The translations under genes were made by a program, and so were the position numbers. From Lepidodermella squamata (lineage: Eukaryota > Animalia > Gastrotricha): 64,000 nt of DNA. The stretch spans positions 124,001 through 188,000 of the forward strand of contig JBLDXI010000001.1 of NCBI GenBank assembly GCA_047495785.1. The letters run 5' to 3'. Under the pieces are notes generated by a model. That model saw nothing but the letters and a program-made list of their open reading frames with translations. It searched no databases and was not told the DNA's origin. Below, piece by piece: positions 6,534 through 56,100 of the stretch (its first letter is position 1; every line of letters begins with the position of its first letter).

Positions 6534-9500
6534 ATGCTTCCGCCGCTCGACCGGTTTTACAGTGGTCGGCAGCCTAAGGTGCCAACTACAACAGCAATAA
6601 TACACAGGATAGCCTGGTTTATATTGGCTTTGGTCGCAATCAGCTACTCTTCGATGGCGCAAACATCGCCGCCAGCCATCAACTCTGCGTATTTAACAGC
6701 ACGGGAAATAGCTGATTTGCGGCTGGCCTTTCCACTTTGTTTGGCCGATATGCCCAATGAAACCGTGCAACAGCCGATCATTCGAATCTCTGTCAATGTG
6801 ACACAACTCTCAAAGCCGGGAGAACGGCTGCAAGGTAAGAAATTGAAATTGAGGAGGCTAAATCGAGGCACTTAGCATTCGAAAATCAAGTGCGGAAGAC
6901 TTATAGATTACAGAGTCATTGCCTTCAAATCAAATAGGGACGTCGAGGGGTTTTTACTGAGAGGCTTTTTACCTATTATCATAACCAATTCTTAGATATT
7001 CGGAAATATTTAAATTACCTATACGGATTACTTTCCTTTCTAGTTGCTGTCGACAGCGCGCGTCTCGGTGTGCTTTTCAATTCAATATTCATCACTGCAC
7101 AATACATCGATCCCGTCTCGAATCGGCGAGTGTTCGGAAAAATTGGTAAGTTTCGTTCTATTTTAGACTGGTATCAATTTATCCATTCATACGGTATTGA
7201 AAATGATTTAACACAAGTAAACTCACCTCGGTTTCTGGCTGCTTCGTTTGCCGCAGAGTTTTTGTTCCTGAGCACTGATGCGAAATCCTAACCTAACGCC
7301 ATTCTAATCTGGGCTTTCATGTTGTCGGATGCCTGATCGTGTCATGTAGGACATGCTATAAATGTGTTTTAAGTATTCGTATTGAAGCGATATAACTATA
7401 ATATATTCTGATATCAAAATCGGTGTTGTACTGCGTTTTTCAATTTCAGTTTTCTCTTGCGTGACCTTTTAACTTTTGTCTCTTTATCCAAATATTTTGA
7501 CATACAGATTGTGGCAGAGGTTGGTAAAGGATTGACTGCTTAAAAATTATTTCGTTTTCCTTTCCTCATACATACGTGTATCCAAAAAATCACCTGTTTA
7601 AATTAACGTCGCTGCAATACACGTTGAAACTGCACGATTGTGGGAAATGAACATCTTGAAAAATGTTTAGACACCCAACCCACTTATATAATATTATTAC
7701 ACGATTTGTGCAGTTTTATACTTTGAAATCAGCATTCATATTTCATTTTCCGCATCGAATTCTCTGGCGTTTTATGTTACTCGTAGTGGCCTGTTTCATC
7801 TCATCATCGGAACTTGATGAAAATGTGTTGCACGCTTTGAGCTTTCCTGTTTAATGCATTATAACAATGCCTGCTTTGCACGTGAAAAATTGCTCCGCTA
7901 ATGCACCAAGCCGAAGTTGTGATGCTGCTTAATTTTTTCATTGCTGCTCCTATGATTTAGCACTCGAATTTTTGTCAAGAATTCGAAAATATTTCAAAGG
8001 GAATGCCTTTCCGCAGCGTAACTCACTTGATTAGTTGATTTTCCCATTTCCCGAGTTGGTTGACAAGTTTAATGTGCCCGTTTGCATTTAAGGCCGCTGG
8101 ACGTCAGAGAACAGACGCCCGTTCACACCGGCCGTGACAACATGCGAGGCAGCCGAGACCCTGCCGCCGGCTTCGGGCGCCGTGCTGCAGTCCGGGCGCA
8201 ATTCGCTGACCTCGGTGCGCTTTCTGTGGGACGCTCCCAACGCCGCTGCCGTTACCTCGACCGGTTCGGCGGAAGTAACCGACGCGAGCACGGAGGTTGA
8301 GACAACTGCAACGCCAATCGACAAATCAGTCTTTCAATACATCAGCTTTTTGTAAGACTGGTAGCTATATCACAAATCACCTATTTTAACTTTGACTTAA
8401 CAACAGGGTTGTCGTTTGGCAGAGCGATGCTCGCGTAAAATGGGTGCTGGCGTGGCGGACGCCTGCCATTCAGCTGTTGTACATGCCGCAGGGCCTCCCG
8501 ACGCCGGCGATAGATCAGCAAGAAGTCGACCCGACTAACGCCACCCTGGGCCCGTCAGTTTCACCCCCGGCCGAAACTCTGAATCTATTCTCAAAACTGC
8601 TCGGAATCGAGAACTGTCTCGTTCAAAGTCAACCAGCCCCCGGCGCTAGTTTAGGCACCACGGTTCGGCCGACCCGTTTGTCAGCGGTCATCGACGCTAG
8701 CGATGCGAATGGCGTATCGCCGTTTACCATGACCGTGACCAAATCGGCCGTTTCGATGCCAGGCGAACGCGTTACCGTTACGATCACGGGCCCGGCTAAC
8801 ATGAGTATGGACAACGTTGTGCTGGCGACAGCTGTCATCGTAGCCCGGCGCAACGTGCCGCCGTATTTGAAGGGCGTCGAGGGTAGCTGGGTGCCGAGCG
8901 ATGCCAGTGAGACGGTCCTGTGCAATGGCTACGTCGCAGTCCGGACGAAGCGCACGTCGACGCGAACCAGTCCGCCGTCGTTCAGCGCTACCTGGCTCGC
9001 GCCGGCAATCGTGCGGGAGAAGATTTTCATCGTCAGTGCGGTTGTGGCATCAGGCTCAGCGGTTTATAAGCTGTCGCCGGCGGCCGTCATTGGACCAAGC
9101 GCCGCCGTGTCGACACAATCGCTCATCGGCGACAGCTTGAACAGCTTCTTGGGCAGCCTGCGATCGATTTGCTCGCCCGACTCGACGCCACTTTCGCCAA
9201 CTTCATCACCCGCTGACTGGCCGCCGCCGACTGGCACGACCAACCTGCCGTTCACAATCGAAGCCGTTCCGTCATTCGTTCGGAATGACATTGTATCTGG
9301 CAGCAAGATGGCCTCTGTTTTCAACAGTAAGTATTTTAATAACTATTGTAGGTAGAGTGTCATTTGCGTAGTCAAGTCGGCTATAAAACGTAATTTCCGA
9401 ATTTCCTAGAAAAATCGGAAACCTTCTATATTTGGGGTGAAATAGCGATTTTAATCGCTCATTTCGCTGTACACGGGAAAAAACCCATGAATTCATCGAC

Positions 9501-12500
9501 CTGCCACATGAATTAAGTGTCGTCCCATGAATTCAATTACTTTTTTATCAATATTTTCATGCACATGAATTGTTTATTGAAACATTTAAAATAACTTAAT
9601 CCATGCTGGTGAATTCAGAGCTCCAACAATTAATTAGTTTTTATATCGTTAATTAGGCAAAAAAAGTTGTGCATATGCAAATGAGCTGTGAGGATGATGA
9701 GGATGAAACCTAGGACTCCAGGTATTCATTACTCATTGGCCGAGACAGGCACTTGGATCCTGGATGCCAATGGAATGCCTTGGATGTCCCGAGGGTTCCT
9801 TTTTAGGCATTGGCAAATCATGATCGGCATTGCCGGTTATAAGTAATGTTGTAATGTAAGTAATGTATAACAATATTTAATTTTAAGAAAATAAAAAATC
9901 ATAATATATATTAATAAAATAAATCGCAATTGAATTCATGGGCATCGATTTTAAAAGATAAAAAACCCATTAATTAATTGTTTTTCGAAACATCCATGAA
10001 TTAGGGTACCCCCAGGCCATGAATTCATGGAAGTTAGAAACTAATAATAAGCCAAAATTGCCACATGAATTCATGGGTTTTTTTTTCCCGTGTAGCTTTA
10101 ACCACTTTTCCGTGGAATTCCGCTGCCGTCTTTGAAGATGGTTCCATCATCCTTCACAGTTTTCGAATTCTTTTTATCAGATTGCCAAGAGCTTTGCTTT
10201 CCATTTCACTTATTTTACGGACCTTATAAGGCCTGACCAAACTATCAAAATTTGAGAAAAATATATTAGTGTATTTCATATGAATTTTCTTAAATAAATT
10301 TGCTCTTTTTCGTACTGATAATAACCTTTGTCTTGACGTATTTTTTCAGTTTCGGTGGTTGGCAATGGGCGAGGCGATAATTTTCGGTTTTTGTTCATTC
10401 AATGCCGCCCGCCGGATTCACCTGTGACGGTGACCACCGCGCAGCCTAATCGTCAGCGCACGGTAACAGGCCGGCGCGCCAACAACAACATCGCATTCCA
10501 GCGCGCCACACCGCCAAGCTTCTATCGACGCCGGCAGGTGCGGTCTCAGAGCATCGGCTACTGGCGCTCAGCCGACCAGCCATCGATGCGCCTGCGTTCT
10601 GGGCCTTGCATCGACTCGGCACTGCTGACCGACGAGGGCGGCTCGGGCATGCATTCAGCCGCGTTTCAACTCCATCTACTGCCGACGACTCAAGGCGATC
10701 TCGTTTGCAGGTGAGCTATACTTTTCATACTTTGTCTACATAAGTTTTCCGCCGCTAACTTGAGTTGACGTGAATATCACGCTTCTCGCAATGCGTAATT
10801 GGCTTGGAATTAATATCGAGTTGATTAGCCGGAAGCTGTATCGAAGAGCTCGATTTCTTGAAGGCCAAGCCTCTTCAGCGCAGAAGAAAACATGATGTTT
10901 ACTTTTTAGCTTTGTTTTCTTTGTTTGTGTATTTTGAATGTGCCGTAAGTACCTATATTTTCCGACAAAGCGCAATGCAATTAGACGCTAAGCAGGCCGA
11001 TGTGAGGATCAATGCTTTTTACACTCGACAAAGTTTTTTGCTCTCGAAACGCCCATCTAACTTAGCGTTGGCCATTTGGCCGGTCGCGGCGTTCAATGAC
11101 CGGCCTTCTCACGCCCTTTCAGCGATGCGCTTTTGTACGACGCGTGCTACACTTAATTGAAGATACATGGCCGGTATCTAGCCACAAGTAATCGTCGCGT
11201 TAGCCCGCGCCGAAGCGAATGCCCGATTACTACTACTACTAAGTTTATATCATCAGCTTCGCGAAAATGTTGACGTTAAGCTCAGCCATTCCAATTAAAT
11301 GCGGCTCGCCAACTGTTAGGCCGCAACATCCCGATTCGCAAACACCGCGGTTTCGCACGACGATTTGTTTTTGCAACCGAAGCAACAACGATAATTCGAC
11401 GCGCCACCGTGCGAGATGAGGCGCTTCAGCCAAAAACTCGCGTATATTGAATTCACACACTACCTGCACGCTATTAGGCTTTTCGCAAGCAGCAGCGAAT
11501 AATCTATCAATCGAATTACGTATAGGCAATTTTTTAGATTTTGAACAAGAACGCACGCCGCTTAGCACGGCGTTATTAAGGCATGATTGCCGCCGCGACG
11601 CGTTGTCTCGATTATCGAAGCCTCGCTCATGCACGAACAACGTTATTTACACCTGCGCGCTCTGTTTTTCGCTAGCTAATTGCCACCCCGCATGCTGCAA
11701 CATGTGACTAAATAGCTATTAACTTTTTGAAAATGTCATTTTTCTGTTTACTTTTCTTCTGCTGAAAAAAGTCTTTTACTATGATTACATGTTATTGTTA
11801 TTTCCCGTCAGATTTTTTCCTCCGTGTTTGTTTTTCGCCATGCCCACTATTAAGATTAAGTAGATAAAAAGTCGCATTGTTACATTGTATAAATAACAAT
11901 TTTGTTTATATTTGCGTCAGTCTGAGGTCTCGTGGGCTCACCTTAATAGATTTTTCTGAGCTCTATAACAAACGCGCGCCTGTATACGAGAACAGGAAAA
12001 GCAACGTGTGAAGCAGTATTTTGACACTCGATTCATAATGTCACGCGCCCGCATGCCACAACCCAACTCCCTAGCGATTAGCTATTTTGGCGTTTCAATG
12101 GGCGATGCAATTATATTTACCTTTCCGAGTGTAAATATACCCCATTTAAACGTAAACAGCAAGATTTTTGTTGCAATATTTTGTGCAGAAAATTAGCTCT
12201 TTATTTATCGCGCTGGTGACGAAGTATTTTCGAGAGATAAGCACCTATAAGTTTTTCAAAAGACACCACAATGTTTTCGCACTTTTTTCAACCCGCGGGC
12301 GTAGGCGGGGGTTCGCTGGACCGGCGCCCAACGCGCTGTCCTTATTCACCGGAATCGAATTGCCAGCGATGGTGCGAGCTTAGACTTTTGTTGTGTTTAA
12401 GTTAGCGCCTTCGCCAAATCGACGGCAAACACACGGGTATCCGACAATAAATAACGAAGACGCACGCTCGAGCGACTCATGAATTATGCACCGGGCGGGC

Positions 12501-15500
12501 GCTCGCGGGCCGGCCAGCTCGGCTAAATGGGAAACGGGGCCTTTTCTAAGCCGGCCTAGCCTAGTTTTATTGCGCGACAAAGGCGCGCGCCGGGCGGCTG
12601 CCGTGTTATTTTAAAGACAAGAAAATGCAATATCGCGCATTTAATGAATATTCATGCCCGGGCGAGAGCTTAATTTTTAACCATCCAACCTAACCGGCCA
12701 GGCCGCTTTCGCCCCGTCGCAGCGCGAGGCCGATCAATTTTTACGGCACGGCCTTCGGGTTTTGTTTTTCTTCGTTTACTTCTTACTAAGTCAACTCGGC
12801 CTAAAACCTACAACAATGGTTCTTTACCTACTTTTTCCTAGATATTTTTAAGGAAGCGCAAGTCATGACGTAACAAAAATTAGTGTTTTTTGCCTTGCGA
12901 AAAAAATGCGAGACGCGTTCCTGCTTCTGAACATCCTGCTTTTTACAAAATGTTTCAGAATGATCCTCGGCAAAGACAACGCTACCTACTGGTCGACCGA
13001 GTACGTGCTATATCGAACCGTGACGGACGATGGTGATAACAATGTAACTGTGACTCGCCCGGCCGCGTCAAGCACAGCGGCGCCCAGGGTATCCACGACA
13101 ACGATGATGGCTCGAACAACCAGGCCGCCGGCTATTTCAACGACAGCCCCCGTGGCTGGCGGTCTTGACTATCTGTCGACGGTTACGCTTGATGTCGCCA
13201 TGTGCCTACTACCCCAGGCAATGATAAACAGCCTGGATGCCAACATGCTAAGAGATATAATTGCGCCAAATTCAAGCAATAACCCGTACTCGATGTCGGT
13301 TAGTCCGAGCGAACTTCGCGCATCTGATCCGTACATCAAGGTGACGATCAGATCATCGGACGAATCGCGGCCTATCACAGCTTTCTTATCTTTCATCATG
13401 TGGATATCACCGAGGACAGGCCTCATCGCCGGTAATTTCACCGAATTGTGGGACACATCATCGGCGGGCTTCTTGCAACTCGACTCGTCATCGCCTAACA
13501 TGGCCGCCTTGTTGCTGACATCTGTAAATGGCGACGCTACGGTCTACTGCCTGCACAACAGGTACGGGCGCGTCAACGGCATCGCGACTCTGACGCCCGG
13601 GCTCATGCAGGTCGATGCTCTGTACTTCACGCCGTCGGTATGGGATCGTATGATCAGGTTTTCGACAGCCAACAATCTCACGCCAGTTCTAATGTAAGTC
13701 TTTTCATTTTTTACCTCAAAACTATGGGTGAAGATCTTGAATTAATTTTGGGCAAATAATCCAGAATTTTCGAAAATTCGATGGAAATTCAGAATTAAAA
13801 GGGTTCTTATCGCAAAAATCGACATGTATTAGGATATCCGTGAATTCTGATTATCTTTTAATTGTTCCGAGGCAAAATATTTTTACATTTTTGTCTTTTC
13901 CTTGACTAGGACCGCTGTGTTTGGTGACGGAAAGTTGTGGCGTTTGACACCTGCTATCCTGACAATTTCGAACCAGACTACGGTTGCACCCACTTTGCCA
14001 ACAGAGCCAAGCCCGTCCGCCACAACCCGCGGTGCAGCTACCACGGCACAGGCCTCGACTGTCACCGTGCGAAATGTCACCTCGATCGCGATGAACACCA
14101 CCGCTCGACCGGGTGGGGCGTCGAGCAGCACTGCGCGCCCAGCTATCACTGCGACTGTAACCACTGCGAGGCAGGCGAGTAGCACGGGACCGGCTGCGAC
14201 GACTCAGCGGCCAAGTGCTGCAACGGCGACAACAGCGGCATCGATTGTCACGATGACAACTACCCGCGCGCCGGCAGTCACCACGACCACGGCACGGCCA
14301 GCGACTAGTGCGGCTGCGACAACAGCGAGACCGGCTGGATCGACGACTCGGGTTCCGTTGATCTCATCGACAGCCGCACCCTCAGTTACGGCTTCAACTA
14401 CCCGAGCGACGCAGCAACCTCAAACTGTTCCAGTAGGTTCGCAGAATCGAACTTCCAACGCGACAACCGCCAGCCCAGGCGTTTCTACCGCAAGACCGGT
14501 TACAACTGCTAGCCCGGGTGTTTCTACTGCAAGGCCGGTTACAGCTGCAGCGCCTTCGACAACCAGGCAGCCGGCTGTTTCTAGCGCTGCTCCGGCCGTG
14601 AGCTCGACTACCGCACGAGCGGCGTCAACCACGGCATCTCCGGCAGCGACTACGAAACAAGCGGCGGCGACTTCGGCGGCAGTTACAACGTCTGGACCGG
14701 CGGCGGCCACTACGGCACGGTCGGCTACAACGGTAAAATCAGCCGCTATCACCACGGTCGCCCAAGCAGCGGGTTCCACGGATGACGGCCTGCCTTACGC
14801 GTTCGTTCGCGATGTGGCGCTTTGTTTACTGCCGGCATCGCTTGGCGGCATTGCCAATTCATACTCGTTCGAACCTCGAACAGGCCGCAACAGCCCATTC
14901 ACACTCGCCGTCCAGCCTGCTGATGGTTCTGTGGCTTATGGGGCCGATGCTAATGGTATGCAACTTTTTTATGGGGAAATTCAAGCTATTTTCATCGATA
15001 TTTGTTTTAGTGACGATTTCATCTTCTGACGAAAATCTACCAATCACGGCGTACCTAATGTTCGCTGTTTGGACCATGCCGAAAACCGCGTCGACTTGGA
15101 CTCAAGTGCCGTATAACAACACACCAGCCGGCATTTTCAGCCCCGGCCAAGAGACGATTTCTTTCATCGGCAGCAATCCTGAGTTGACGCGGGTTCGCTG
15201 CTCCAGCAACGATTTCGGAGAGGTTACCGGCTTGGCATCCTTAGCGCCCAGCCTGAAAACTGTCTCTTCACAATGGTTCGCTCCTCTCAGCTTGCCGCGT
15301 GGCGCTAGTTCTTCGGTCCAACCGACAATTTTGTGAGTAACCTAAAACAATCGCACGTGATTTGACTTAATTTTTGTTGTTTAGTGCTGGAGTTTTTGCT
15401 GATCAAAAGCTGTGGGAACTTCGCCCGGTTTTCCTCTCATTGTACCAGGTCTCCTCAACGGCTCAAGTACGATCTTCGACGGCTGCAGCTGGCAGTGGCA

Positions 15501-17899
15501 CTACTACGACAGCGAGACCAGCCGCGCAGTCAACAGCAACGGCATCAACAACTGCCGCTTCGATAACAACGAGAAGTGCACCGCCTCGTCTCTCGACGGC
15601 AGGCCCAGTGGCTGTTTCGACCCCGAGAATTCCGGGCGTCAATCTGACTGTAATGCCATCCAGCGTTCGAACACGCCCGCCTACTACCGTTCCGACCGAG
15701 CCTACTACAACGACGAGGGCGCCGACGACGAGCTCGACCGCAGCTCCAGCTACTACAAGAGCAGCGGCTACAACAGCCCGACCAGCAGCTACGACTGCGG
15801 CGCAGACAACGGTCAGGGCGCCTGCTGTAACTACGGCTCGTGCTGTCGGCCAGGTGACCACAGTGGGCACATGGCGGCCGATAGACGGCGGCAATGTGAC
15901 AGTCGCTGATACTGCCGTGCCGATTTCGTTCGACTGCCGGCGGCACAACCACGACTGCAAGCTCACTGGTGGTTATTGCGACACCGACTCGGGCAAGTGC
16001 CGGTGTTCCAGCTATTACTCAGCTTATGATTGCCGTGTACTCAGTAAGTTGAACTTTTTTAATTCTGATGAAAATAGTCAATGCTCTTTCCAGCTGCCCT
16101 CGTTCGCGAGGACGCTGCTTGCAACGATGGCAAAGGGTGCGGAAAGGGCGAGAAAAACGGAGATTACTGTCTTGCGACTGCCCGCGACCGAGATGGCGTG
16201 AAAGAGTTTACTCAATGCTCATGCGCCTACGGCTCTTACGGGCCTGACTGCAATCGGTCTAGAGGTATTCATTCCCGCTCATTAACTCTGATATTATAGA
16301 AGTGATCATTTGTTTTTAGTGGAACTGTCCTGCAGCGAGAGTGAAATGTCAATCGCCATCAACCCGTTCCCGTCATTCGCTGTTTTCGAGGGGCATATTT
16401 TCCTGCTAAATCAAACCAACGATGTTATGATCGAGGACGAAGAGTGCCGTTTCAACATCTCAGACATGGCCTACACCTTCAACATGCCTTATGAAACGCT
16501 GATAAACCGATGCGGCGGCACTAAACTTGCTGATAACGTGAGCGTTAAAAAATTTCAATTTTTTAATTTACCTCCTTAATTTATTTCAGACGTTCAATAT
16601 GAGATTCATAATTCAAAATCACCCGCATTGGCTGACGGCGTACGACCAAATTCTGAGTGCAAAATGCGTGCTAACAGTCATGCAGCCTTACGAGAAGTCG
16701 ATCGTCATTCAGACCAACGGCAATGTGCGGCTGTTCAGCGGCGCCAACGCACTGTCGAACTTGGCCGAGAACGTGATTGTTGGCGAACACACGCGCATCA
16801 TCCCGCGGCCGGTTCCGCAGCCCAACTTCAGCCTGCGCCGCGTCAACTTCGACCAGAACGGCGTGTGGTCGACTGCCGAGGTTCAAGGACCGGTCAAGAT
16901 CGGTGACACGATTCAATTCTCAATTGAAAATTCGAACAACACGTACTACTCGCATCTACGCACCGAGGACTGCACGCTTACGATGGACAACTCGATTGAG
17001 ATGAAACTCATTTCTCGCTCTTGCCCGGCTTCTAGAGCTGCCTGGACTCTTCTAAGGTTAGAATTGTTCATTAATTAGATATGCGTTGGTTCAAGAAAAT
17101 TTCGATTTTTAAGGTGGGATAAGACCATGTACACGAACTCATCCGTGGCTTTCTGGCTTCGACTGCCGGCCAATGCGTTGTCAGGGTGGCCGAGACAGAT
17201 CGACATCTACTGTAGGATCAAGCTGTGCCTTCATGACAGTTACGATCAGTGCGATATCGTAAGGAAAATCTTAGAAATTATCAACTTGTTTTAAAAATTC
17301 CATTCCAGAACAACAACGGCTGTAAAGGAGTGACGAATTTCTTGCCGCCAACCCTGGCGCTCAAGAACTACGGCAGGAGGCGGCGTGAAGTTGCCGATGT
17401 CATCAACAGCAAGCTACACGCCGACTCGTCGTCCGAGGAGGACAAAACGCCGGTAGTTTACGCGACCGTCCACTATTCGTTCCAGCTGGATGTCGACGAG
17501 CAGGGCAACAACCAGCAAGAGGCGAATGCGCCCACCGATGACAGCAATAGCGATTGGACACCCGGCGCCGCTGCTGCAGATCCGAGCCTGATGAGCGCAA
17601 ATGCAGACGCGTTGCGGCAACAATCGGCGTCTAGTTTCGACGAGTTTGCGCATCTGTCGTCGAAATCACCAGCGAATTCGCTGTTGCTGACCCCCGGGCT
17701 CACCAGCGATGACCTGGTGATGAGCGGCGGCAAGGGCGCGGCGCCTGTTGTCTCGCCGAGCCTCAGCCTCATCAACCAGTGGCTGCTCATCGGCCTCATG
17801 TTCGTCGTGTTCTTGCTGATCGCCGCCGCCGGGCTCATCTTCTACCTGAGCTACAGGCTGCGGCACTCACAGGCCTATTCGCTCTCCCATGCCGGTTAA
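6534..17899 (+). CDS. Multi-exon ZP-domain membrane protein 'ZP-A': signal peptide, ~5 Reeler-like domains, Thr/Ala/Arg/Pro mucin stretches, 2 EGF-like, ZP module, furin site, TM
   Basis: Hand-spliced with GT-AG introns keeping frame. Hydrophobic leader IAWFILALVAISYSSMA. Reeler-like motifs VRFLWDAP, FSATWLAP, NFRFLFIQCR, RPITAFL, VSSQWFAP. EGF CDTDSGKCRCSSYYSAYDC. ZP cysteines VELSCSE..ECRF..NRCG..SAKC..EDC..IYCRIKLC. RRRR furin site, then TM WLLIGLMFVVFLLIAAAGLIFYL; stop at 17899. Start codon choice is uncertain. Confidence 0.85.
9472..10092. mobile_element. Non-autonomous TIR element (621 bp), CAC..GTG termini, TA flanks; CMC/EnSpm-like MITE in an intron of ZP-A
   Basis: Left TA|CACGGGAAAAAACCCATGAATTCAT, right ATGAATTCATGGGTTTTTTTTTCCCGTG|TA. 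Several subterminal CATGAATT repeats at both ends. AT-rich, no ORF. Superfamily is inferred from the termini only. Confidence 0.8.
14463..14540 (+). repeat. 39-bp coding tandem repeat (TTASPGVSTARPV x2) in the ZP-A mucin region
   Basis: Two 13-codon units encoding the same peptide, with 6 synonymous differences. Confidence 0.85.
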
Positions 17900-20599: not shown

Positions 20600-21331
20600 A
20601 GTCGATTGACGAGCGAATCTCGGTGAAGTCAACTACTATTATTATTATTATTATTAGGAACAGCTGATGCATATTTTCCGCTGCCATACCTGTATAATTT
20701 TCTACTCAGTGCTCGTTTATTGGTAAATAAAATAAATCGACGAAAATGGGCCGAACTGGGCCTAAGTGTAACGATGGTTATAACAATAACTAATTTATAC
20801 GCTCATTTTGCTACTTTCGCTAGTTGAAGCTGAGAAATGGCTGTTCTGCGCTGCGTCTTGACATTTGGTTTAAATATCTTCATTATATTCAAGTATACCT
20901 GAATGCATTTAATTAAAAGCGGATCCGAGTTCGCCTCAATAGCAATTTACGTAGTACTGGCTCATCGTGAGAGTGAAATAAGCTGGTAATCTTATAAGCG
21001 ATATCGGCCATAAATCGCCTCAATTTATCCGTAATCTCGTAAAGATGATACGTAAGAAAAACACGCGGCTAAATCTACATTTAGCGGATTTCGAAGTAAC
21101 TTGCCGACCTGCCGTCTGTACTGGATAGTACGCTGTTTGACGCAGTTTGACGTCTGTCGCCGCGCATTTGGACAAACAGAGCAATTTCAGCCGTGCAATC
21201 CGATCATTTTTTCATTTTAAGCTGGATTCCTAGCAAAAATCGGCAACTGCGTCATGAGACGAATAAGAAGCCGTAAGATGCCGCCAGATCACTGTTGGTT
21301 GAAATTTCGGCAATAAATAATTGGCTGATCC

Positions 21332-34926: not shown

Positions 34927-35214
34927 TTAGGGTCGGAGAATACGTTTGAATCATATAGTTTAACTCCATAGACGGGCACGCGTCGCGCTAAAAACATGTA
35001 GCCAAAAGAACATGCTCGTGTCAACATGATTGTTTTCCTCGTGTTGTATGCTCCTGATAGCTGAAAATCTGGTCCCAATTACGCTGCTGTAGCAAATGGC
35101 GCCATTTTGGCGCCGAACTGCAATAGCTAGGTTTCTATAGCTTCAACTTTTAAATAAGATTTAATTTCTATCTGTACTAAAAACACACCTGGTTGTTGCC
35201 TCCGATTGTCGGAA

Positions 35215-36761
<1,547 letters not shown>

Positions 36762-36883
36762 TAATTGTTTTCTTTGTAATAACAGTTTGTTTCGCTACGT
36801 TTTCGTATTGTCGTCAGGCAAAAATAAAACTTTTGTACGGTGTCACTTTCCTTGTTTTAATATTATACGAAAATTATATTGAG

Positions 36884-47000: not shown

Positions 47001-47623
47001 ATTATCAACTTGTTTTAAAAATTCCATTCCAGAACAACAACGGCTGTAAAGGAGTGACGAATTTCTTGCCGCCAACCCTGGCGCTCAAGAACTACGGCAG
47101 GAGGCGGCGTGAAGTTGCCGATGTCATCAACAGCAAGCTACACGCCGACTCGTCGTCCGAGGAGGACAAAACGCCGGTAGTTTACGCGACCGTCCACTAT
47201 TCGTTCCAGCTGGATGTCGACGAGCAGGGCAACAACCAGCAAGAGGCGAATGCGCCCACCGATGACAGCAATAGCGATTGGACACCCGGCGCCGCTGCTG
47301 CAGATCCGAGCCTGATGAGCGCAAATGCAGACGCGTTGCGGCAACAATCGGCGTCTAGTTTCGACGAGTTTGCGCATCTGTCGTCGAAATCACCAGCGAA
47401 TTCGCTGTTGCTGACCCCCGGGCTCACCAGCGATGACCTGGTGATGAGCGGCGGCAAGGGCGCGGCGCCTGTTGTCTCGCCGAGCCTCAGCCTCATCAAC
47501 CAGTGGCTGCTCATCGGCCTCATGTTCGTCGTGTTCTTGCTGATCGCCGCCGCCGGGCTCATCTTCTACCTGAGCTACAGGCTGCGGCACTCACAGGCCT
47601 ATTCGCTCTCCCATGCCGGTTAA
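38028..47623 (+). pseudogene. 5'-truncated duplicate of ZP-A (lacks promoter, signal peptide and most of the first Reeler-like domain)
   Basis: Identical to 8304-17899 but starts inside the third coding exon; upstream lies the antisense METTL24-like exon. Confidence 0.8.
39196..39816. mobile_element. Duplicate of the 621-bp CAC..GTG MITE (copied with the segment)
   Basis: Same sequence and same flanks as 9472-10092. Confidence 0.8.
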
Positions 47624-49204
47624 AACACAGACACAAACTCGCCATCGTGTGCTGCCAGTCTCCTCAAACAAAAATTTGCTACGTTTTATCGCGCCTGTAA
47701 AAAAAAGCCTCGCAAATTCCCATATAAGAGATGTGAGAAGAAGATATTTTCTACTCTGCCAGTTGAAAAAGATGTGTACAGCTTAACCTAATACTGTAGA
47801 GTAAAAAGGTTGTGCGTAGGGCTGTTTAAGGCCGCATGCTATTATTTGTTTTTATGATGATCGAAAACGTTGTTGTGAAATTGCGGCGAAATTTCTTCTT
47901 TTGCTATTCTTCTTCTGATTGTGATATCAATTGTTCATGATAACCATGAAGTGTATAGTTTGATTTCTCTTGTTTCGTCTTTTTCGGCGATCATCATCTT
48001 CTATGTAGCACGCGCATGACACCTATCGACGCATGCCCGGCTTGTAATTCGCAATAGAATATCGCGCGCTGTTTTCTCCGCATGCGCTTTAACGCTATAT
48101 ATTTTGATGAAAGATGAAAAGTTATCATAATAATATATTACAAGAGTTTTATCAATTGTGTAAAAATATTCACAGAATTTATTTTCTATTTTTGATAAAA
48201 AAAATCTCAGCGTCTTCAGTTGTATAAACGTTTATCATTGGATTGATTGAAATTTGATTGATTTGATTTTTTATTGATCACTTTTGTGAACCTCGTAGAA
48301 ATTCGTTCAGAAGTCTTCGTAACCAAGGCGATAGCTCACTTTTCGTTAAGGACCCCCTGCCAGCCATTACTACTCGAGATTCCTCTGATTACTGATGAAT
48401 GCATTTACTCAACCTGAAACTCCAAGGCAATAATGTTACCTCAAACTCATTTTTCGTTATGGGTTGTTCCTCTTTCGATTTGTTTGTTGCGATTAGATCG
48501 TACAATTTTGATGTTCCAATTTCTCAATTTTCTTTGGCTAAAAACAATTCGCTCACCGCTCACTCAAATCAATCTTGCTATATCGTACTATCGAGAAGGA
48601 AAACAATACCTATATGAAATGTCTAATGGAAGCCAACTCGAACCGAACCGTTCATTTTTATACAAATGCGCCACAAAACTTCAATCATAATCAACTGTCA
48701 ATTGTAGCTATAAATATATTTCTTCCTTTATTATATAATTATTATTTAATAATTGAGAATGAATTCTTAAAATAAAGATACGAAAGAGTCATAGTATTTC
48801 CTGACCAGGTAATTAGGCAAGTGGAGACTAAAAAACTTAGTTAACTGGTTTTACTATTCGCAATGCGGCTTTATCAATTATGTTTTCAATTCAGTCATGT
48901 TGGTCAAGTGTCGCAGACGAAGCTGCCCATTGATGCGGTCATTCATCAAGAGCCTCAAAAGGTTAAAAATTCGATAAGGCGTCCGCATTATCACTTATAG
49001 ATTGCTTAGCAACTCAAAGCAAGGGTTTCATAAATAATTAACCGAATGCACTCAGAAAGATAACACTGTCGTAGCAGACCGTTCCTACATTGCGTTATCA
49101 GCAGAGTAGAAATCATGATAACCTACTTGTAAGCGGTGTGACAATGAGGGTCAATTCAAAGCATTAGCAATATAGCCGTCGAAACGCGAAATTCAATCGA
49201 AACA

Positions 49205-50323
49205 ATGAAATTCAATCAATCAATGATTTTATGGCTCCGAAATAAGAAGTCCCTTATTGCGAACAGTTTAGCTTACGCTGGCTTTCTTGTGGTCGGTGAT
49301 TACCTGGTATGAAGATTCAAGTATATATCATTTTCTAAGGATGTTATTTAATATAGTCGATGCAACTTGAGAAAAGATTAAAACAAGGGCAATCGCTGGA
49401 GAAATTAAAGGAATTATCCGTTAAACACAACGTTGAGCCATACCATTACATTCCAGATCCAACTCATCATCAACATGTATCAATGAGTGAAGCCTCGTCT
49501 CCAGTGGAATCTGTCGATGAAGAGATGAGTGGAACAAAACTCGCTCGCAAATTGGGCTGCGTATTCGCCTCTGGAATTCTCGTTGGCGCTTTTTTAGATC
49601 GATGGTACATTTTTCTAGGTAAGTCATTTTTGCAGATTATTTTCATAATAGTAAGCTCCCATTTAAAACGAATAAAGCTTTACACACATGTACAATGGGC
49701 TCATCGAAATTCTATTTTTATCTGTAGATGGGAAACTTAGTGCGACGAGCGGTAAAACCATAGCAATAAAAGTAAGGATTTCAACCCGATAACCATCGAT
49801 AACAATCGACCTCGTCTATTTCAAGGTACTCATAGACCAGCTGGTAGCATCGAATGTCGCCAATGCTGGATTTTTCATAACCTGCGGTCTATTCGAAGGT
49901 AATATTGTATAAACATTTCACGCTTCTCAGCTAATTATTTTTCAACTACAGGGATGACCCCAGCAGAGTGCTATGCTGAGCTTCGAGAGAAATACATGCT
50001 ATTAGTCATGAGGTAAGGATACCTGTCTGATTTGTTTTGCGCTCCATGGCCGGTTTTCTTCCAGTGACATTGTTTTCTGGGTTCCAGCTCAAACGATCAA
50101 TTTTAAATTTGTGCCGCCCAAGTATTTTTAAAGACCAAGGAATAATTATTGCTAAACACCGTTAAAAGGTATCGAGTACTGTATATCTCCGTGGCGAATG
50201 TCTTATGGAACATACTGCTATGCTATCATCGCGTAAGTACCGAGCTTTCTTTTGACATCTCATCAAAGACTTAAACTTTCTACACAGAATTATGACCTTC
50301 AAAAGTTAATATCGCGTAAATGA
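49205..50323 (+). CDS. Mpv17/PMP22-family protein, complete duplicate
   Basis: Matches 19481-20599 including its flanks. Confidence 0.87.
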
Positions 50324-51055
50324 AGTCGATTGACGAGCGAATCTCGGTGAAGTCAACTACTATTATTATTATTATTATTAGGAACAGCTGATGCATATTT
50401 TCCGCTGCCATACCTGTATAATTTTCTACTCAGTGCTCGTTTATTGGTAAATAAAATAAATCGACGAAAATGGGCCGAACTGGGCCTAAGTGTAACGATG
50501 GTTATAACAATAACTAATTTATACGCTCATTTTGCTACTTTCGCTAGTTGAAGCTGAGAAATGGCTGTTCTGCGCTGCGTCTTGACATTTGGTTTAAATA
50601 TCTTCATTATATTCAAGTATACCTGAATGCATTTAATTAAAAGCGGATCCGAGTTCGCCTCAATAGCAATTTACGTAGTACTGGCTCATCGTGAGAGTGA
50701 AATAAGCTGGTAATCTTATAAGCGATATCGGCCATAAATCGCCTCAATTTATCCGTAATCTCGTAAAGATGATACGTAAGAAAAACACGCGGCTAAATCT
50801 ACATTTAGCGGATTTCGAAGTAACTTGCCGACCTGCCGTCTGTACTGGATAGTACGCTGTTTGACGCAGTTTGACGTCTGTCGCCGCGCATTTGGACAAA
50901 CAGAGCAATTTCAGCCGTGCAATCCGATCATTTTTTCATTTTAAGCTGGATTCCTAGCAAAAATCGGCAACTGCGTCATGAGACGAATAAGAAGCCGTAA
51001 GATGCCGCCAGATCACTGTTGGTTGAAATTTCGGCAATAAATAATTGGCTGATCC

Positions 51056-52434
51056 ATGGTCTGCATTGTCCTGATCTCGGCAAAACTGGCGGCCAGTTTT
51101 GTAATAGCTGTCTCAGTTCTGGCTGGCTATTTTATCTTCCTTAGTGGATTCGACCCAACTAGCAGTGAAGAACTACAGAATCCTCACGAAGTCATGCCGA
51201 GAGAGGCCGTGCTTAACATTGAAAGTGAAAGAAAAGTTATTCTTCTATTGACGCCCTTGCATAGCAATCGAAACTGGTTCTTCCCGAAACTTGACCTTGC
51301 GCTCAACCAATGCCCAACTAGGCAATCGAGAAATTGCGTTCTGACCAAGGACAAACGAAAGCTGAGAACTGCTGATGCCGTCGTAGTACACCCTCGCGAC
51401 GGCTTGGATATTCGGGATGTATCACGGCCAAATCGACTGAGCAGCAAACAACAACTTGTGTTTTTCAGCTTCGAATCACCTGCCCATACTTATGCGGGAG
51501 AATTTCCAGCCGGTGTTATTCCCAACTCTGCCTACAGCGATTTAAGACTCTTCGATGGATTGTTCAATCTCACGATGACATACAGGTCAGTTGAAAAAGC
51601 GACTGAGAAGGTCTCAGCATTTTGTTTCATGCTTATAGAACTAATTCGGACATTCCGATTCCATACGGAAAATTCATTCGGAAAGGTTCTTCTATCAACG
51701 TTAGCGACGTTAGCGTTGGGAATAAGACTAAAGCGGTGGCTTGGATAGTTTCGAACTGTGAAACAGCTTCCCGACGCGAGCGCTACATCGAAGAGCTGAG
51801 CAAATATATCCAAGTCGATATATATGGCCGATGTGGAACCAAGTCTTGCTCTTGTCCTAGGCGCGATCTCTCGGGAGATTCTGGCCTAGAAATATGCTCA
51901 GAGTGCTATGAAGAAATTGAAAGAGATTACTACTTCTACGTAGCCTTCGAAAACTCGCACTGCAGCCAGTATGCAACAGAAAAGCTCTTCGTACCCTTAT
52001 CGAGGAATGGTCGCAATCGCGTGATACCATTGGTCTTTTCACTTCACCTCGAATCTATGATCGGGAATGGCAGTAGAAGATGGCCTGGTTATTCAGAGCT
52101 CGCACCACCCCATTCTTTCATCGACGCAGCCGATTTCAAGGAAGGTCCAAAACGACTAGCTAAATACCTCAAGTACTTGATGGAAAATCCAAGCGAATAT
52201 TTGAGCTATTTTCAATGGCGAAATGAATACGAAGTTATTGACACTTTCTCCGACCTCAAGTGGCAAGCAGGGTTCTGCGAGCTCTGCCGAAAGCTCAATG
52301 AAGAAGAAGATGCTTATTCGTCTTACGGCAGTATTCACGACTGGTGGTTCGGGAAAAACGTCGAAGCTAACGGGATGAACGCGTCGTGTCAAGTTCCATC
52401 GAATGATTTCACGCCCGTAAGTGTGATAGCTTGA
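51056..52434 (+). CDS. Alpha-1,3-fucosyltransferase (GT10), complete duplicate
   Basis: Matches 21332-22710. Confidence 0.92.
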
Positions 52435-53150
52435 GAAAAAGGTCTGAATAAACAAGAGGAGAGCTGTATCAAGATTTTTTATTCTAATATAATCATCGAA
52501 ACATCTCATCAATCGAAGACAGGTGGTATACACAATACATCAAATATATTTCAAAACAATAATCGGGACTTCTTTGTACAAGTTCAAGATGCGCTTGTCG
52601 TAAAATCCAAGCCTTTCTCTCATATACAATAATAAACAATAATTTTTCAACACAAAACATTTCAACATAAATTCGATGGATGTGTTTGAAAGCAATGGCG
52701 ATAATGCCGTTCTTTCATGCATATGTATAAGTGGAAGATTTGCGCTTATATGCATCATCGACAAGTGACAAGTAGTGAAAAATTGAAAATCCGCGCAGCG
52801 CGCAGAGTTGCAAAAAGTTTAACGACAATCTTTACAATTTTAGTCGATTTCTTCTCATTTTAGCTTTCTTCGATAAAAAAAACCACGACAAATAAAGGGA
52901 CAAGCTTCGTTTTTTTTGCAGTGAAAATTGAGCGACGGCAAGCTTCATGTTAGGCGACAGTATGCAATGATCGTACTTTCAGCAGTTGAGCTAGTTAGGA
53001 TTATTTACACACGTACTTTAGAAGAGAAAATGAAATATTTTGTTGTTAATAATATAACTCATTAGCAGGTCGATTGAGTGGCCTTATAATTTATAACGAT
53101 ATTTTTCCTAATGGCACCATATTTTGTTGTTTTGCTGAAGCCTATTACAA

Positions 53151-56100
53151 TTACACATCGTAGCCGAGCATTCTAGCGACTTTTATCACGTTCATAATTA
53201 CGAAGTAGAGCACGGCAGCGTAGAAGAGAAAGCAGACCAGCATCCAGATAAAGGTCCATACCGCTTCGGCGTAATCAAAGTCCCCTGTATCATGTCAACG
53301 GAATGTCAATGAATAAGTTCGAAATTCAAAATTATTGCTTACGTGGTAGACCCTTCATCTTCTTTCGCATCGATTTCGCCGTCCGTTTACCTCCGATGGT
53401 TTTCACTTCTAGATTTTCTCTCGCCTTCTTCTTCGCTGCTGCTTTCGATTGCTTTGTCGTCTGTGCCGTTCGTTTCGAAACTTCGACCGGTTCAACTTCG
53501 CGCCGTCGCCTTCTGTGGCGGAAAGTGAAGCCTGGTATAGACGGGCACGCACGCCTCGGGCACCCGTCTGTTGTTTCATCGGCGCACAGGTGGACGCTAC
53601 AGTTGAAGGAAAGCGACTTCGAATCGGCTGGCCAGAACGCGGAGTAAGAAAACATCGCCATAGCGTTTTCAGATTCATTCGAAGCGGAACCAACAGCAGA
53701 CAGCAGAATTTCGCCAGCAGCTACGTCACCGTCAGCATTCATCCAGCCAAGCAGGTAACGCCTGACAGTGGCAGTTGGGCACCTGGAAAAGCAATACACC
53801 TAGAATGATCATATAAAAACTGAGTCTACATACCCTTCAGAGATAAGCATGGCACTGCTTTGCCGGCTGTCATCGAAATCGACACGACACTCGTCAAGGT
53901 AAACATGTTTGAAATCTGTTTGAAAAACGAGCTTAAACAAAGGAAAAATCAGTGGATTGAGAAATTTACAAGTAGTATCGTGGTTGGCAACTTCGATTTC
54001 CAAGACATCTGACAACTTGATCTCTTCGGCAGTGACAGCCATGTTGGTCTTTTCGTCAAGTGAATTGCCGTAAGAGCGCTTGCGGATGGCGAAGCTCAAA
54101 TTATGCAGGGCGAGTAGGCTTTCATCGAAGGGCTTCTCTCCAGCCTGGAAGAGTCGCGTCGAGTTGGCGATGCCTACAACAACCTGGCGCGGCATTTGGT
54201 CAAGCGAACCGCTGACGGCTACGGTCGAGGCGAAGCTGACTTGCAGGCGGGCTTCGTTCTTAGTCAGTGTGCCTTTCTTCACGGCGAAATGCGACAATTT
54301 ACTAGTTTCAGCTTTCTTCTTCTTAACCGCCATCTGATTCGACTGTTCAGCGGAATTGGGGGTCGGCGGGCTGACGTCGCAGTAGACCAGGTAGACGGGG
54401 TCGAAGGCGGTGAGCATGTCGTAGGGTGAGTATTGGATCATGAACTGAACGTAGATGGTGTTGTTGTCCGTCAAATGAGCGCCGCAGTTGTCGATAAGGT
54501 GACTGAACGGCCGGTCGAGCACGTAGACGCCACTGCCGTCCTGAACCCGGCGGAAACTACAGCTAGGCAGCTCGCCTTCAGCGGACTTGAGCAACGCCGT
54601 TGTTAACGATGATTTCGACTCGTTTCTGTTCGATGATTTGTTAAACGTGCTGACGATGCGGACTGCTCCGGCGAAGTTCGAATGCTGGATGTTTTCGTTG
54701 GTGAATGGGATGACGACGATGCGCATGCCTTGCGAGCTGTCGCACTGAGCTGAGACGCGGGGGATGTCGCAGTCGGCGCCCATGTAGTCGTACGGGCAGA
54801 AGCACTGCTCGTTCGAGATGCCACCGTGGCCAACTGATATGTACCGTCTCCCGCAGACACCGCCGTTCGAACAGCCTCGACCCTTGTTGCACTTGGAGTT
54901 CTCAACAACCTCTGAAATTCGGAAAAATTTGCATAATTTATTGATAAATTGAGTTTCAAATCTTACCTGAAATTGAGCAATCGTAGCCGGTGAATTTGGT
55001 GCAGATGCACTTGCCGGTGAGTCTATCACACTTGGCTCGTGTATCGCCGCCAAATCGGCAAAAGTGTCCATCTCTTCGACAGTCGAAACCGCGCGAAAAC
55101 ATCGAAGAAGACGCGTTTTGCTCTCCGAAACCTAATCCTGCCGTAGTGTCGTTCTCGACCAAGTTGGATGAATTTCCAACTTGGACAACAGCTGGCAAGC
55201 GTTCAGCAGCAATAGGGTTAGGCTTGGATATTTCTAGGAAAAGGTATTTTATATTAATACAGAAAGCTAATTGGATTAACGAATTTACCAATTGCTACAG
55301 GAACTTCCATGATGTTAACGTCCGATTCAGTTGCGTCAACGCTAGGGGCAGCCTGAGGAGGTTCAAAGACGTCGTTATCACTTTCGTTGGTCGAATTGAG
55401 CGCGACTTCAGTTGAGTTCAACTCCAATTTAGGCTGATTGGTTATGAGGATCGTCTGATTCTCGATCTGTGGCTCATTCGGCGCAATTTCCCCACTTCCC
55501 ATCAAAGAAATGATCGGCAATGCTGTTGTTTCAACCGAAGCCGTAGTAGCTTGAATTCCTGAGGTTGATTCAGTTGAGGTCGAATTGGCATCACTCGCAT
55601 TCACCGTTGCCGGGAGGCCAGTTGTAGAAGCTTCAATGGTCGTAGTTGTCCCACTGCTGAATGACGTAGTTTCAGTAGGCGAGAACTCGGTCGCATCTAC
55701 AGGAATAAAATTTTCTGACTCGATCTCCTTTTTCACGCTTATGCTCATAGTCGTCAAGGTTTCCGGCGTGGGAGTGCTCAATTTTTTCCGATCAACTTTT
55801 TTCGCGATCTTGAACTGTTGGCCTGTTCTCTGGAGCATGTTCGAAACTTCGGGCTCGCCAGATCCAAATGATGAGTCGACAATAGTTGTATCGTCATTGC
55901 CTGAAATCAACGCTTCTGCCGTCGAATTTTCGACAGCTGCTGGCGTGGTTGTAGTCTCGAAATTCTCCTTGACCTGCGTTGAAAATTCGACTGGAAGCGA
56001 TGAAGAAACGTTGTACGCTGACATTGCCTCGACCAGTTCGGTTATTGATGTTTCGTTCAGCCCAAACAAGTCGAATGGAGGGAGAGTTTTGTTGTAAATT

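What the first reader, a model, noticed from the sequence alone, without database searches (positions are those of the whole stretch)
8304..54632. DUP-insert-DUP architecture: 16.6-kb direct repeats around 13.1 kb of unrelated DNA, equivalent to an integrated 29,724-bp two-locus circle
Seen: A-D-B-D-C, where removing D+B restores a clean locus (ZP-A reads from A into D, ZP-B reads from C into D) and B is broken within genes at both ends, so B comes from another locus. No transposon ends or transposase are visible. Inference: this is what results from a chimeric extrachromosomal circle (D+B) integrating by homologous recombination into D, or from a double template switch during replication (FoSTeS/MMBIR). 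The repeats should allow pop-out of a 29,724-bp circle or (D-B)n amplification. Apparent complete identity means a very recent event or assembler reuse of one consensus. The alternative layout X-B-D-B-Y at the donor locus has the same two junctions.
Basis: partly seen in the sequence, partly recalled or inferred. Interest (0 to 1): 0.82.

Follow-up and report, generated by a model that had tools for sequence, protein, structure and literature searches.

The report
Two-segment linked duplication, unverified assembly
A 16.6-kb stretch occurs twice, perfectly identical, around a 13.1-kb copy of DNA from 285 kb away; it looks like a very recent copy-and-paste rearrangement of a known kind, but this genome was probably assembled from enzyme-amplified DNA of one tiny animal, so the raw reads must confirm it.

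Summary
Window 8304-24908 and 38028-54632 are identical over 16,605 bp and bracket 13.1 kb (B).

New here:
- **Donor.** B copies C1:432,861-446,011, 285 kb downstream, same orientation, 95% identical. The two genes cut at B's ends are whole there.
- **Age.** B differs from its parent almost only at synonymous sites (pN/pS 0.02-0.08, no frameshifts). B is therefore a freshly cut copy of the other haplotype's allele, not an old insertion. This reconciles 95% (B) with 100% (D).
- **Junctions.** D-end|B has 1 nt of microhomology. B-end|D-start carries a 21-nt filler, partly copied in reverse from 8-18 nt inside the D end (P about 0.006), as polymerase-theta-type repair does.
- **Genes.** D-end|B fuses two exons in frame.

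The architecture matches linked interspersed duplications (DUP-NML-DUP, "cycle of templated insertions"), a known kind.

Caveat: the assembly statistics match Lepidodermella squamata, built by hifiasm from phi29-amplified DNA of one animal. An amplification chimera or an over-amplified free circle is not excluded, and no reads were available.

Earlier notes of this scan report smaller inserts bracketed by perfect duplications elsewhere in this genome.

Odds: real rearrangement about 0.6. Interest is modest.

The parts
8304..24908 (+). D1, first copy of the 16,605-bp perfect direct repeat
   Evidence: 0 mismatches to 38028-54632; only two copies in the assembly
38028..54632 (+). D2, second copy of the repeat
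24909..38006 (+). B, a copy of C1:432,861-446,011 (285 kb downstream, same orientation). It has 3.5% mismatches plus small indels, which is allele-level divergence.
38007..38027 (.). 21-nt filler at junction J3 (B end | D2 start), found in neither parent sequence
   Evidence: alignment
24890..24900 (-). Template of the filler. Its reverse complement is the last 2 nt of B plus the first 9 nt of the filler, and an 8-mer of it is copied a second time. It lies 8-18 nt inside the D end at junction J2. The same sequence occurs at 54614-54624.
   Evidence: Monte Carlo P(match of 11 nt or more within 150 nt of a breakpoint) = 0.006
24088..25527 (-). Open frame across J2. It is an in-frame fusion of an exon of B's large secreted Ig/cadherin-like repeat gene (5' part) to the 3' part of the Reeler/cuticlin-like gene of D.
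   Evidence: The frame equals the parental exon at C1:432527-433480, and it shares its stop with 53809-55071.
53812..55131 (-). Intact parental exon across J4 (D2 | C), the unrearranged form of the D-end gene
8092..8352 (+). Open frame across J1 (A | D1), ending at a GTAAG donor. It is a probable early exon of the mucin-like Reeler gene that fills D to about 17.9 kb. The D2 copy lacks the part in A.
37613..38065 (-). Open frame across J3. It is the FkbM-type methyltransferase exon of B, cut about 25 codons after its start. The start Met and membrane anchor are present only at the donor.
31535..32131 (-). First exon, with signal peptide, of B's Ig/cadherin-like gene. The fusion gene at J2 therefore keeps its own 5' end.
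   Evidence: weak Big_9, Cadherin and PKD hits only
32695..33882 (+). CUB-trypsin serine protease gene 1, carried whole inside B
   Evidence: Trypsin 8e-31, CUB 3e-9
35206..36764 (+). CUB-trypsin serine protease gene 2 (several exons), carried whole inside B
   Evidence: Trypsin 3e-42
21332..22710 (+). Alpha-1,3-fucosyltransferase (GT10) gene, whole inside D1. The duplicate is at 51056-52434.
   Evidence: Glyco_transf_10 8e-53; Glyco_tran_10_N 2e-17

Best explanation
This is a real, very recent linked interspersed duplication, also called DUP-NML-DUP or a two-junction 'cycle of templated insertions'. It sits on one haplotype of a highly heterozygous animal, probably the gastrotrich Lepidodermella squamata.

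Most likely course, in one concerted event (inferred):
1. A broken or stalled 3' end at the D end (window 24908) was joined to, or primed on, a site 284 kb ahead, using 1 nt of microhomology.
2. 13.1 kb (B) was taken from there.
3. The B end made two abortive primings on single-stranded DNA right at the original D end. These left the 21-nt filler.
4. The strand re-entered 16.6 kb upstream at the D start, so D is present twice.

The junction scars are of the polymerase-theta (alternative end-joining) type.

Shown: the layout, the donor, the junction sequences, the origin of the filler, and the allele-like divergence of B.
Inferred: the order of steps, the enzyme, and that the event happened in the animal and not in the test tube.

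Consequences:
- a second copy of a fucosyltransferase gene and of two CUB-trypsin genes;
- one in-frame fusion gene with its own 5' end;
- two truncated gene copies.

The equivalent placement at the donor locus (X-B-D-B-Y) is not excluded.
For: - **Layout.** Exact 16,605-bp identity and abrupt edges. Only two D copies, and B plus its parent B', in the assembly.
- **Donor.** B' lies at C1:432,861-446,011, with both edge genes intact there.
- **Age of B.** B against B' gives pS 0.105-0.163 and pN/pS 0.08 and 0.02 in the two genes that are truncated in B, with no frameshifts or stops. An 'old truncated copy' model is rejected at p<1e-20.
- **Allelic level.** 3.5% mismatch fits the 2.99% heterozygosity reported for the matching assembly. 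A human DUP-NML-DUP case shows the same pattern of one identical and one heterologous duplicate.
- **Junctions.** J2 has 1 nt of microhomology. J3 has a 21-nt filler whose first 9 nt, plus a 2-nt overlap, are the reverse complement of D-end bases 24890-24900, with a second 8-nt re-copy (P about 0.006). This ties the two junctions to one event. It is the 'templated insertion' hallmark of polymerase theta (PMC7368036).
- **Size.** Pol-theta-dependent tandem duplications in C. elegans brc-1 mutants are mostly 10-20 kb. D is 16.6 kb.
- **Enzymes.** A family-A polymerase gene and Ku genes are present in this genome.
- **Assembler.** hifiasm joins reads only by long exact overlaps, so each junction must exist in reads (inference).
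Against: - No reads, depth or independent assembly could be examined.
- The assembly statistics match a genome built from phi29 MDA of one animal, without chimera removal. The same method gave 17 'translocations' in a C. elegans control, against 0 for unamplified DNA.
- D (16.6 kb) is longer than the mean HiFi read (13.4 kb), so the threading through D rests on the longest reads only.
- Perfect identity is also what an artefact would give.
- The enzyme assignment rests on a single filler.
- The species identity is inferred from assembly size, contig number and GC content, not from sequence.
Confidence: 0.6

Rival explanations
1. In-vitro artefact. During multiple displacement amplification a phi29 nascent strand switched templates: D end to B start on a molecule of the other haplotype, then B end back to D start. 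The chimeric amplicon was re-amplified enough for hifiasm to thread it into the primary contig. The animal itself would have only A-D-C.
For: - The matching assembly was made from MDA DNA of one animal with chimeric reads left in.
- The C. elegans MDA control assembly carried 17 translocations against 0.
- Direct-orientation joins more than 10 kb apart make up 58 of 475 MDA chimeras, and most of those lack complementarity of 2 nt or more, like J2.
- A nascent strand stays tethered near its origin, which could explain the return to D.
- The filler contains an inverted copy, and inversion is the commonest MDA signature.
Against: - Two long-range switches are needed that close a perfect cycle.
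- Each junction would need multi-read support against roughly 2,000 normal template copies per locus (my own rough estimate of about 1,000 cells times 2 haplotypes).
- phi29 is highly processive, so two abortive copies of 9 and 6 nt primed from 2 nt are not what it typically leaves. They are typical of Pol theta.
- 85% of MDA chimeras are inverted and mostly join sites less than 10 kb apart. Both junctions here are direct and span 284 kb and 314 kb.
Confidence: 0.2
2. A free 29.7-kb D+B circle (extrachromosomal circular DNA) existed in the animal's cells. Rolling-circle synthesis by phi29 over-amplified it, and the assembler wrongly threaded it into the chromosome through D.
For: - The two junctions are exactly those of a 29,724-bp circle.
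- phi29 amplifies circles preferentially. This is the principle of circle-enrichment methods (own knowledge).
- The filler shows that the D end was single-stranded and close by when the B end was joined, as in end-joining of two fragments.
Against: - A circle made of two segments 285 kb apart is rarer than a one-segment circle.
- The assembler would still need reads joining A-D-B and B-D-C consistently. A concatemer would more likely come out as its own circular or tandem contig.
- There is no depth information either way.
Confidence: 0.1
3. A chimeric D+B circle formed first and later integrated into the chromosomal D by homologous recombination. By the same junctions, the true structure could instead be X-B-D-B-Y at the donor locus.
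For: - It has the same junctions and copy numbers as the assembled layout.
- The ambiguity between these placements is documented for human linked interspersed duplications.
Against: - It needs more steps than a single templated-insertion cycle.
- B (13.1 kb) is about the mean read length, so many reads should span it. hifiasm would then see D on both sides or X/Y (inference), which favours the assembled placement.
- The third placement, an exchange between homologues, is disfavoured. Both the J2-side and the J3-side ends of B differ from B' (99% and 95%).
Confidence: 0.15
4. An old insertion, a transposon, or unequal recombination between pre-existing repeats.
For: The 95% identity of B to its parent, taken alone, would suggest an old copy.
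Against: - pN/pS of 0.02-0.08 in the truncated genes rejects long residence as a broken copy.
- D1 equals D2 at 100%.
- No terminal repeats, transposase or extra copies of B exist beyond a 190-bp dispersed repeat inside it.
- The breakpoints share no homology beyond 1 nt.
Confidence: 0.03

Closest known systems
Linked interspersed duplications (DUP-NML-DUP) of human genomic disorders, ascribed to FoSTeS/MMBIR template switching (PMC12616954; PMC6902434)
   Same: Two same-orientation segments, separated by copy-neutral DNA, are each gained once. Two junctions link them reciprocally (end of 1 to start of 2, end of 2 to start of 1). The junctions are blunt, microhomologous or carry a small insertion. 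The alternative placements cannot be told apart without spanning molecules. One reported case has one duplicate identical and the other copied from the heterologous chromosome.
   Different: The segments here are far smaller (16.6 and 13.1 kb against hundreds of kb). The host is a compact invertebrate genome. The structure is seen only as an assembled contig, not as a validated variant.
Cycles of templated insertions in cancer genomes (PCAWG, PMC7025897)
   Same: A string of copied template leaves the host locus and returns upstream of its departure point, re-replicating a host segment. Most such events have just two junctions.
   Different: Those events are somatic and the templates are usually on other chromosomes. 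Here the event is apparently germline or clonal and the template is on the same contig.
Polymerase-theta-dependent tandem duplications and templated insertions in C. elegans brc-1/brd-1, helq-1 and tnsl-1 mutants (PMC7368036; PMC8654963 and PMC13031629 seen as titles and abstracts only)
   Same: The duplicated segment falls in the 10-20 kb class. Junctions have 0-few nt of microhomology, or insertions copied from sequence next to the break.
   Different: Reported junction insertions are short. Here a 13.1-kb distant segment sits at the duplication junction together with the short filler. No mutant background is known and no genetic dependence was tested.
phi29 MDA chimeras (Lasken and Stockwell 2007, PMC1855051)
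   Same: They join distant sequences with little or no complementarity when the sites are more than 10 kb apart.
   Different: They are mostly inverted, mostly join sites less than 10 kb apart, and are single random junctions. They are not two junctions closing a cycle.

Membership tests
Linked interspersed duplication / cycle of templated insertions | Two non-adjacent reference segments are each present in one extra copy | tested here: met
   D occurs twice. B plus B' makes two copies. This holds at the level of the assembly only; true copy number needs read depth.
Linked interspersed duplication / cycle of templated insertions | Two novel junctions link the segments reciprocally in the same orientation (end of 1 to start of 2, end of 2 to start of 1) | tested here: met
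   J2 joins D end (C1:148,908) to B start (432,861). J3 joins B end (446,011) to D start (132,304). Both are on the + strand.
Linked interspersed duplication / cycle of templated insertions | The intervening DNA is copy-neutral | tested here: inconclusive
   The A end and the C start are single-copy.
Linked interspersed duplication / cycle of templated insertions | Junctions lack long homology and are blunt, microhomologous or carry a short insertion | tested here: met
   1 nt at J2 and a 21-nt filler at J3
Polymerase-theta-mediated end-joining scar | The insertion is templated from sequence within tens of nt of a break end, primed from a 1-4 nt microhomology, often with repeated abortive copies | tested here: met
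   An 11-nt match (2 nt overlap plus 9 nt) to the reverse complement of 24890-24900, and a second 8-nt re-copy; P about 0.006
Polymerase-theta-mediated end-joining scar | Genetic dependence on Pol theta | not testable with these tools
   Only the presence of a family-A polymerase gene in the genome was shown. It was not confirmed to be Pol theta.
Transposon insertion with target-site duplication | Defined element ends (terminal repeats), a transposase or reverse transcriptase, and further copies with the same ends | tested here: not met
   B's ends lie inside host exons that continue at the donor. B carries only host-type genes. The genome search finds no further B copies apart from a 190-bp internal repeat.
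Non-allelic homologous recombination duplication | Pre-existing homologous repeats at the breakpoints | tested here: not met
   The breakpoint flanks share no similarity beyond 1 nt. No other repeats exist in the window.
MDA (phi29) chimera | The junction is present only in amplified DNA, as one amplicon lineage | not testable with these tools
   No reads are available. Orientation and distance are atypical but not excluding.

The most novel reading that the evidence does not exclude
This locus may be the extreme case of a lineage-specific mutational habit of this gastrotrich. Earlier notes of this scan describe many young inserts (LINEs, an EnSpm, a Maverick, small genes) bracketed by perfect duplications of 0.2-3.7 kb of target DNA. 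If those and this 16.6-kb case share one mechanism, the germline of this parthenogenetic animal would routinely repair breaks by 'duplicate the target and capture DNA at the junction'. That mechanism could be widely staggered breaks, or fork-restart tandem duplication closed by Pol theta with capture of whatever DNA is at hand. It would be a steady source of gene duplicates and in-frame fusions.
Probability: 0.15. Interest if true: 0.65.

Novelty: new member of a known kind. Interest (0 to 1): 0.3.

Why it matters
If real, this is a cleanly resolved, essentially zero-age example of a templated-insertion cycle in the germline or clonal line of a non-model animal from a barely sampled phylum. 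Both junction scars are readable. The inserted copy shows allele-level divergence from the assembled parent locus. The products are immediate: an in-frame fusion gene that keeps its own 5' end, extra copies of a fucosyltransferase and two CUB-trypsin protease genes, and two truncated gene copies.

It also gives a concrete test case for how far structural variants in assemblies made from phi29-amplified single animals can be trusted.

As a kind of event it is already well described in humans, cancer genomes and C. elegans, so the general interest is modest.

Tried and rejected
- **Whole-segment searches.** Searching the whole of B or the whole of D against the own genome returned only short dispersed repeats and missed both the self-match and the donor. 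The donor was found with a 1-kb junction probe, then local BLAST against 60 kb fetched around it.
- **RNA genes.** No tRNA and no Rfam family in the window.
- **Independent evidence for J2.** The search for homologous proteins with the 469-aa frame across J2 gave nothing. Exact look-ups of that frame and of its unrearranged counterpart were not on record. No transcript or independent assembly evidence was obtained. These blanks say nothing about the junction's reality.
- **Interval between window and donor.** I did not try another route.
- **Earlier notes at the donor.** A look-up there is not possible, because coordinates are limited to the window.
- **Readings rejected:**
  - old insertion with later homogenisation (pN/pS test);
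  - transposon;
  - recombination between repeats;
  - exchange between homologues, since both ends of B differ from B';
  - a paralogue elsewhere in the fetched DNA as the source of the hypervariable linker in CUB-trypsin 1.
- **'ZP' labels.** Pfam did not confirm them above threshold.


Full report
**1. Observation**

Comparing the window with itself at an offset of 29,724 gives one uninterrupted run of 16,605 identical bases. The copies are 8304-24908 (D1) and 38028-54632 (D2). There are no mismatches and no N, and similarity ends abruptly at all four edges (seed seen). The spacer B is 24909-38027.

The window is G000:C1:124,001-188,000 of a 121.2-Mb, 151-contig eukaryotic assembly. One-kb probes over all four junctions hit only contig C1. 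D therefore has exactly two copies, and the assembly holds no alternative haplotig of A, D or C. The window has no tRNA, no Rfam hit and no other repeat of 30 nt or more.

**2. Gene content**

D holds these features:
- The bulk of a plus-strand gene for a mucin-like, Thr/Ala-rich secreted protein with a Reeler domain and a C-terminal membrane anchor. A probable early exon (open frame 8092-8352) crosses A|D1.
- A GT10 fucosyltransferase gene at 21332-22710.
- The 3' part of a minus-strand gene whose 5' part, with a Reeler domain, lies in C. Its frame 53812-55131 crosses D2|C.

The 'ZP' labels rest only on a sub-threshold cuticlin-C hit. D contains no transposon-like genes.

B holds these features:
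- A minus-strand gene for a large secreted protein with Ig/cadherin-like repeats (only weak Big_9, Cadherin and PKD hits). Its signal-peptide exon is at 31535-32131, and its 3' end is missing.
- Two complete CUB-trypsin protease genes on the plus strand.
- A minus-strand FkbM-type methyltransferase gene that lacks its start.

**3. The donor**

The B half of the J2 probe matched C1:432,861-433,361 at 99%. BLAST of the window against 60 kb fetched around that site gives a single alignment: window 24908-38009 to C1:432,861-446,015. It has 95.2% identity, 458 mismatches and 81 gap openings, in the same orientation. Nothing in A, D or C resembles the donor's flanks.

At the donor, the Ig/cadherin-like exon (432,527-433,480) and further exons continue past the left breakpoint. 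The methyltransferase exon (445,618-446,130), with its start Met and membrane anchor, continues past the right breakpoint. B' is therefore the intact parent and B is a cut-out copy. All four breakpoints lie in probable exons.

**4. The age paradox and its resolution**

D1 and D2 are identical, but B is 3.5% diverged from B' in substitutions, fairly evenly along its length. A one-step event seems to require B to equal B'.

The coding comparison resolves this:

| Gene truncated in B | pS | pN/pS |
|---|---|---|
| Ig/cadherin-like | 0.105 | 0.08 |
| FkbM-type methyltransferase | 0.163 | 0.02 |

There are no frameshifts and no premature stops. If B had sat here as a broken copy while the divergence built up, about 63% of the differences should be non-synonymous. 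Only 18% are (p<1e-20). The divergence therefore arose while both copies were intact genes. B is a freshly cut copy of a diverged allele of B', or of an unassembled intact twin.

**5. Probable source of the genome**

Earlier notes of this scan call the genome 'probably a gastrotrich'. The only gastrotrich genome paper found describes Lepidodermella squamata (PMC11660948). It reports 122.8 Mb, 157 contigs, GC 43-45% and heterozygosity of 2.987%. The window's assembly has 121.2 Mb and 151 contigs, and the window itself averages about 45% GC.

I take the identity as probable but not proven. If correct:
- B against B' is simply allelic divergence.
- The primary contig either switches haplotype between the window and the donor, or the copy was templated from the homologue.
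- A human DUP-NML-DUP case shows the same pattern: one duplicate identical, the other from the heterologous chromosome (PMC12616954).

**6. The junctions**

*J2 (24908|24909).* The D end meets the B start with one shared G. The donor-side breakpoint abuts a short (GGC)n run.

*J3.* Homology to B' ends at 38006 (...GGTAA). The next 21 nt, CGAGTCGAACGAGTCCAGGGG, occur in neither parent. D then starts at 38028.

The 11-mer made of the last 2 nt of B plus the first 9 nt of the filler is the reverse complement of 24890-24900. That site lies 8-18 nt inside the D end at the other junction. An 8-mer of the same template is copied a second time. In 3,000 shuffles, a match of 11 nt or more within 150 nt of any breakpoint occurred with P = 0.006.

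The D-end region was therefore single-stranded and close by when the B end was being joined. This ties both junctions to one event. [quoted passage not shown] A family-A polymerase gene and Ku genes exist in this genome, but I did not verify that the polymerase is Pol theta.

**7. Mechanism**

Relative to the unrearranged order A-D-C...X-B'-Y, J2 is a deletion-type join and J3 is a duplication-type join. Together they form a closed two-junction cycle that gains D and B once each.

My preferred reading is a single concerted event:
1. A 3' end at the D end engages the B locus 284 kb ahead.
2. 13.1 kb is copied or captured.
3. The end returns and primes abortively twice at the original break.
4. 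It re-enters 16.6 kb upstream.

Sequence cannot tell whether this was replicative (break-induced replication with template switches) or end-joining of fragments, including a transient D+B circle that later integrated.

Of the three placements known for such events, exchange between homologues is disfavoured. Both ends of B carry the non-B' allele. The assembled layout and the donor-locus layout (X-B-D-B-Y) remain open. Because B is about one mean read long, many reads should span it. That modestly favours the assembled layout (inference).

**8. Artefact risk**

The matching assembly was made from one animal by phi29 multiple displacement amplification. HiFi reads averaged 13.4 kb, hifiasm 0.15.2 was used, and suspected chimeric reads were kept. 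The same protocol on C. elegans gave 17 'translocations' against 0 for unamplified DNA.

MDA chimeras are 85% inverted and mostly join sites less than 10 kb apart. Direct joins more than 10 kb apart do occur (58 of 475), and most of them lack complementarity of 2 nt or more (PMC1855051). An amplification chimera is therefore a serious rival.

Against that rival:
- Two direct long-range switches would have to close a cycle.
- Both junctions would have to outcompete thousands of normal template copies.
- The filler is a stuttering 9+6-nt product that does not suit a highly processive enzyme.

A free D+B circle over-amplified by rolling-circle synthesis and mis-threaded by the assembler is a second artefact route. 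'Assembler reuse of one consensus' is unlikely, because hifiasm lays out corrected reads and joins them only by long exact overlaps. Each junction must therefore exist in reads (inference).

My odds are:

| Reading | Odds |
|---|---|
| Real chromosomal rearrangement | about 0.6 |
| MDA chimera | about 0.2 |
| Free circle | about 0.1 |
| Everything else | remainder |

**9. Consequences if real**

- The frame 24088-25527 (minus strand) crosses J2 with both parental frames preserved (586 and 439 nt upstream of the junction, both 1 mod 3; same stop as the parental frame).
- A fusion gene therefore exists. It has the promoter side, signal peptide and Ig/cadherin-like repeats of the B gene, and the C-terminal part of the Reeler/cuticlin-like gene.
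- The fucosyltransferase gene and the two CUB-trypsin genes gain a copy.
- The D2 copy of the mucin-like gene lacks its 5' end.
- The methyltransferase copy in B lacks its 5' end.

**10. Comparison and novelty**

[quoted passage not shown] D's size falls in the 10-20 kb class of Pol-theta-dependent tandem duplications. It fails the tests for a transposon and for recombination between repeats. It is a new member of a known kind.

**11. Link to other notes of this scan**

Several earlier notes on other parts of this genome describe young inserts bracketed by perfect duplications of 0.2-3.7 kb (LINEs, an EnSpm, a Maverick, small genes). I could not test them. If they share a mechanism with this 16.6-kb case, the genome-wide pattern would be more interesting than this single locus.

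All protein work was done exon by exon, by reference.

Noticed in passing
window 32900-33400 (and C1:440,926-441,334): The Thr-rich linker between the CUB and trypsin domains of CUB-trypsin gene 1 is far more diverged between B and B' (77-91% per 100 bp, with indels; gene-wide pN/pS 0.32) than the rest of B (about 97%). No paralogous donor for gene conversion was found in the 124 kb at hand.
   Followed up: partly
window 34738-34928: A dispersed repeat of about 190 bp (MITE-like in size) inside B has 40 or more copies on many contigs at 77-95% identity.
   Followed up: no
window 9471-10095 (and 39195-39819): A repeat of about 620 bp inside D has copies on contigs C28, C29, C36, C4 and C34 at 80-95% identity. 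Its short inverted matches suggest terminal inverted repeats.
   Followed up: no
C1:432,840-432,861 (L026): The donor-side breakpoint of J2 abuts a short (GGC)n run. This could be a fork-stalling or secondary-structure site, or coincidence.
   Followed up: no
window 13902-16201: A local GC peak (58%) comes from long Thr/Ala/Ser/Pro-rich mucin-like coding repeats, which keep several overlapping frames open on both strands. ORF lists are unreliable here.
   Followed up: no
C1:446,737-447,883 (L027): A second FkbM-type methyltransferase paralogue lies head-to-head with the one cut by J3, followed by another CUB-trypsin-like gene. The donor region is thus itself a small tandem gene-family cluster.
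   Followed up: no
C1:453,790-456,560 (L028): A perfect 123-bp direct repeat (plus a 66-bp one) with 2.6-kb spacing in the donor region may be another small insert bracketed by a duplication.
   Followed up: no
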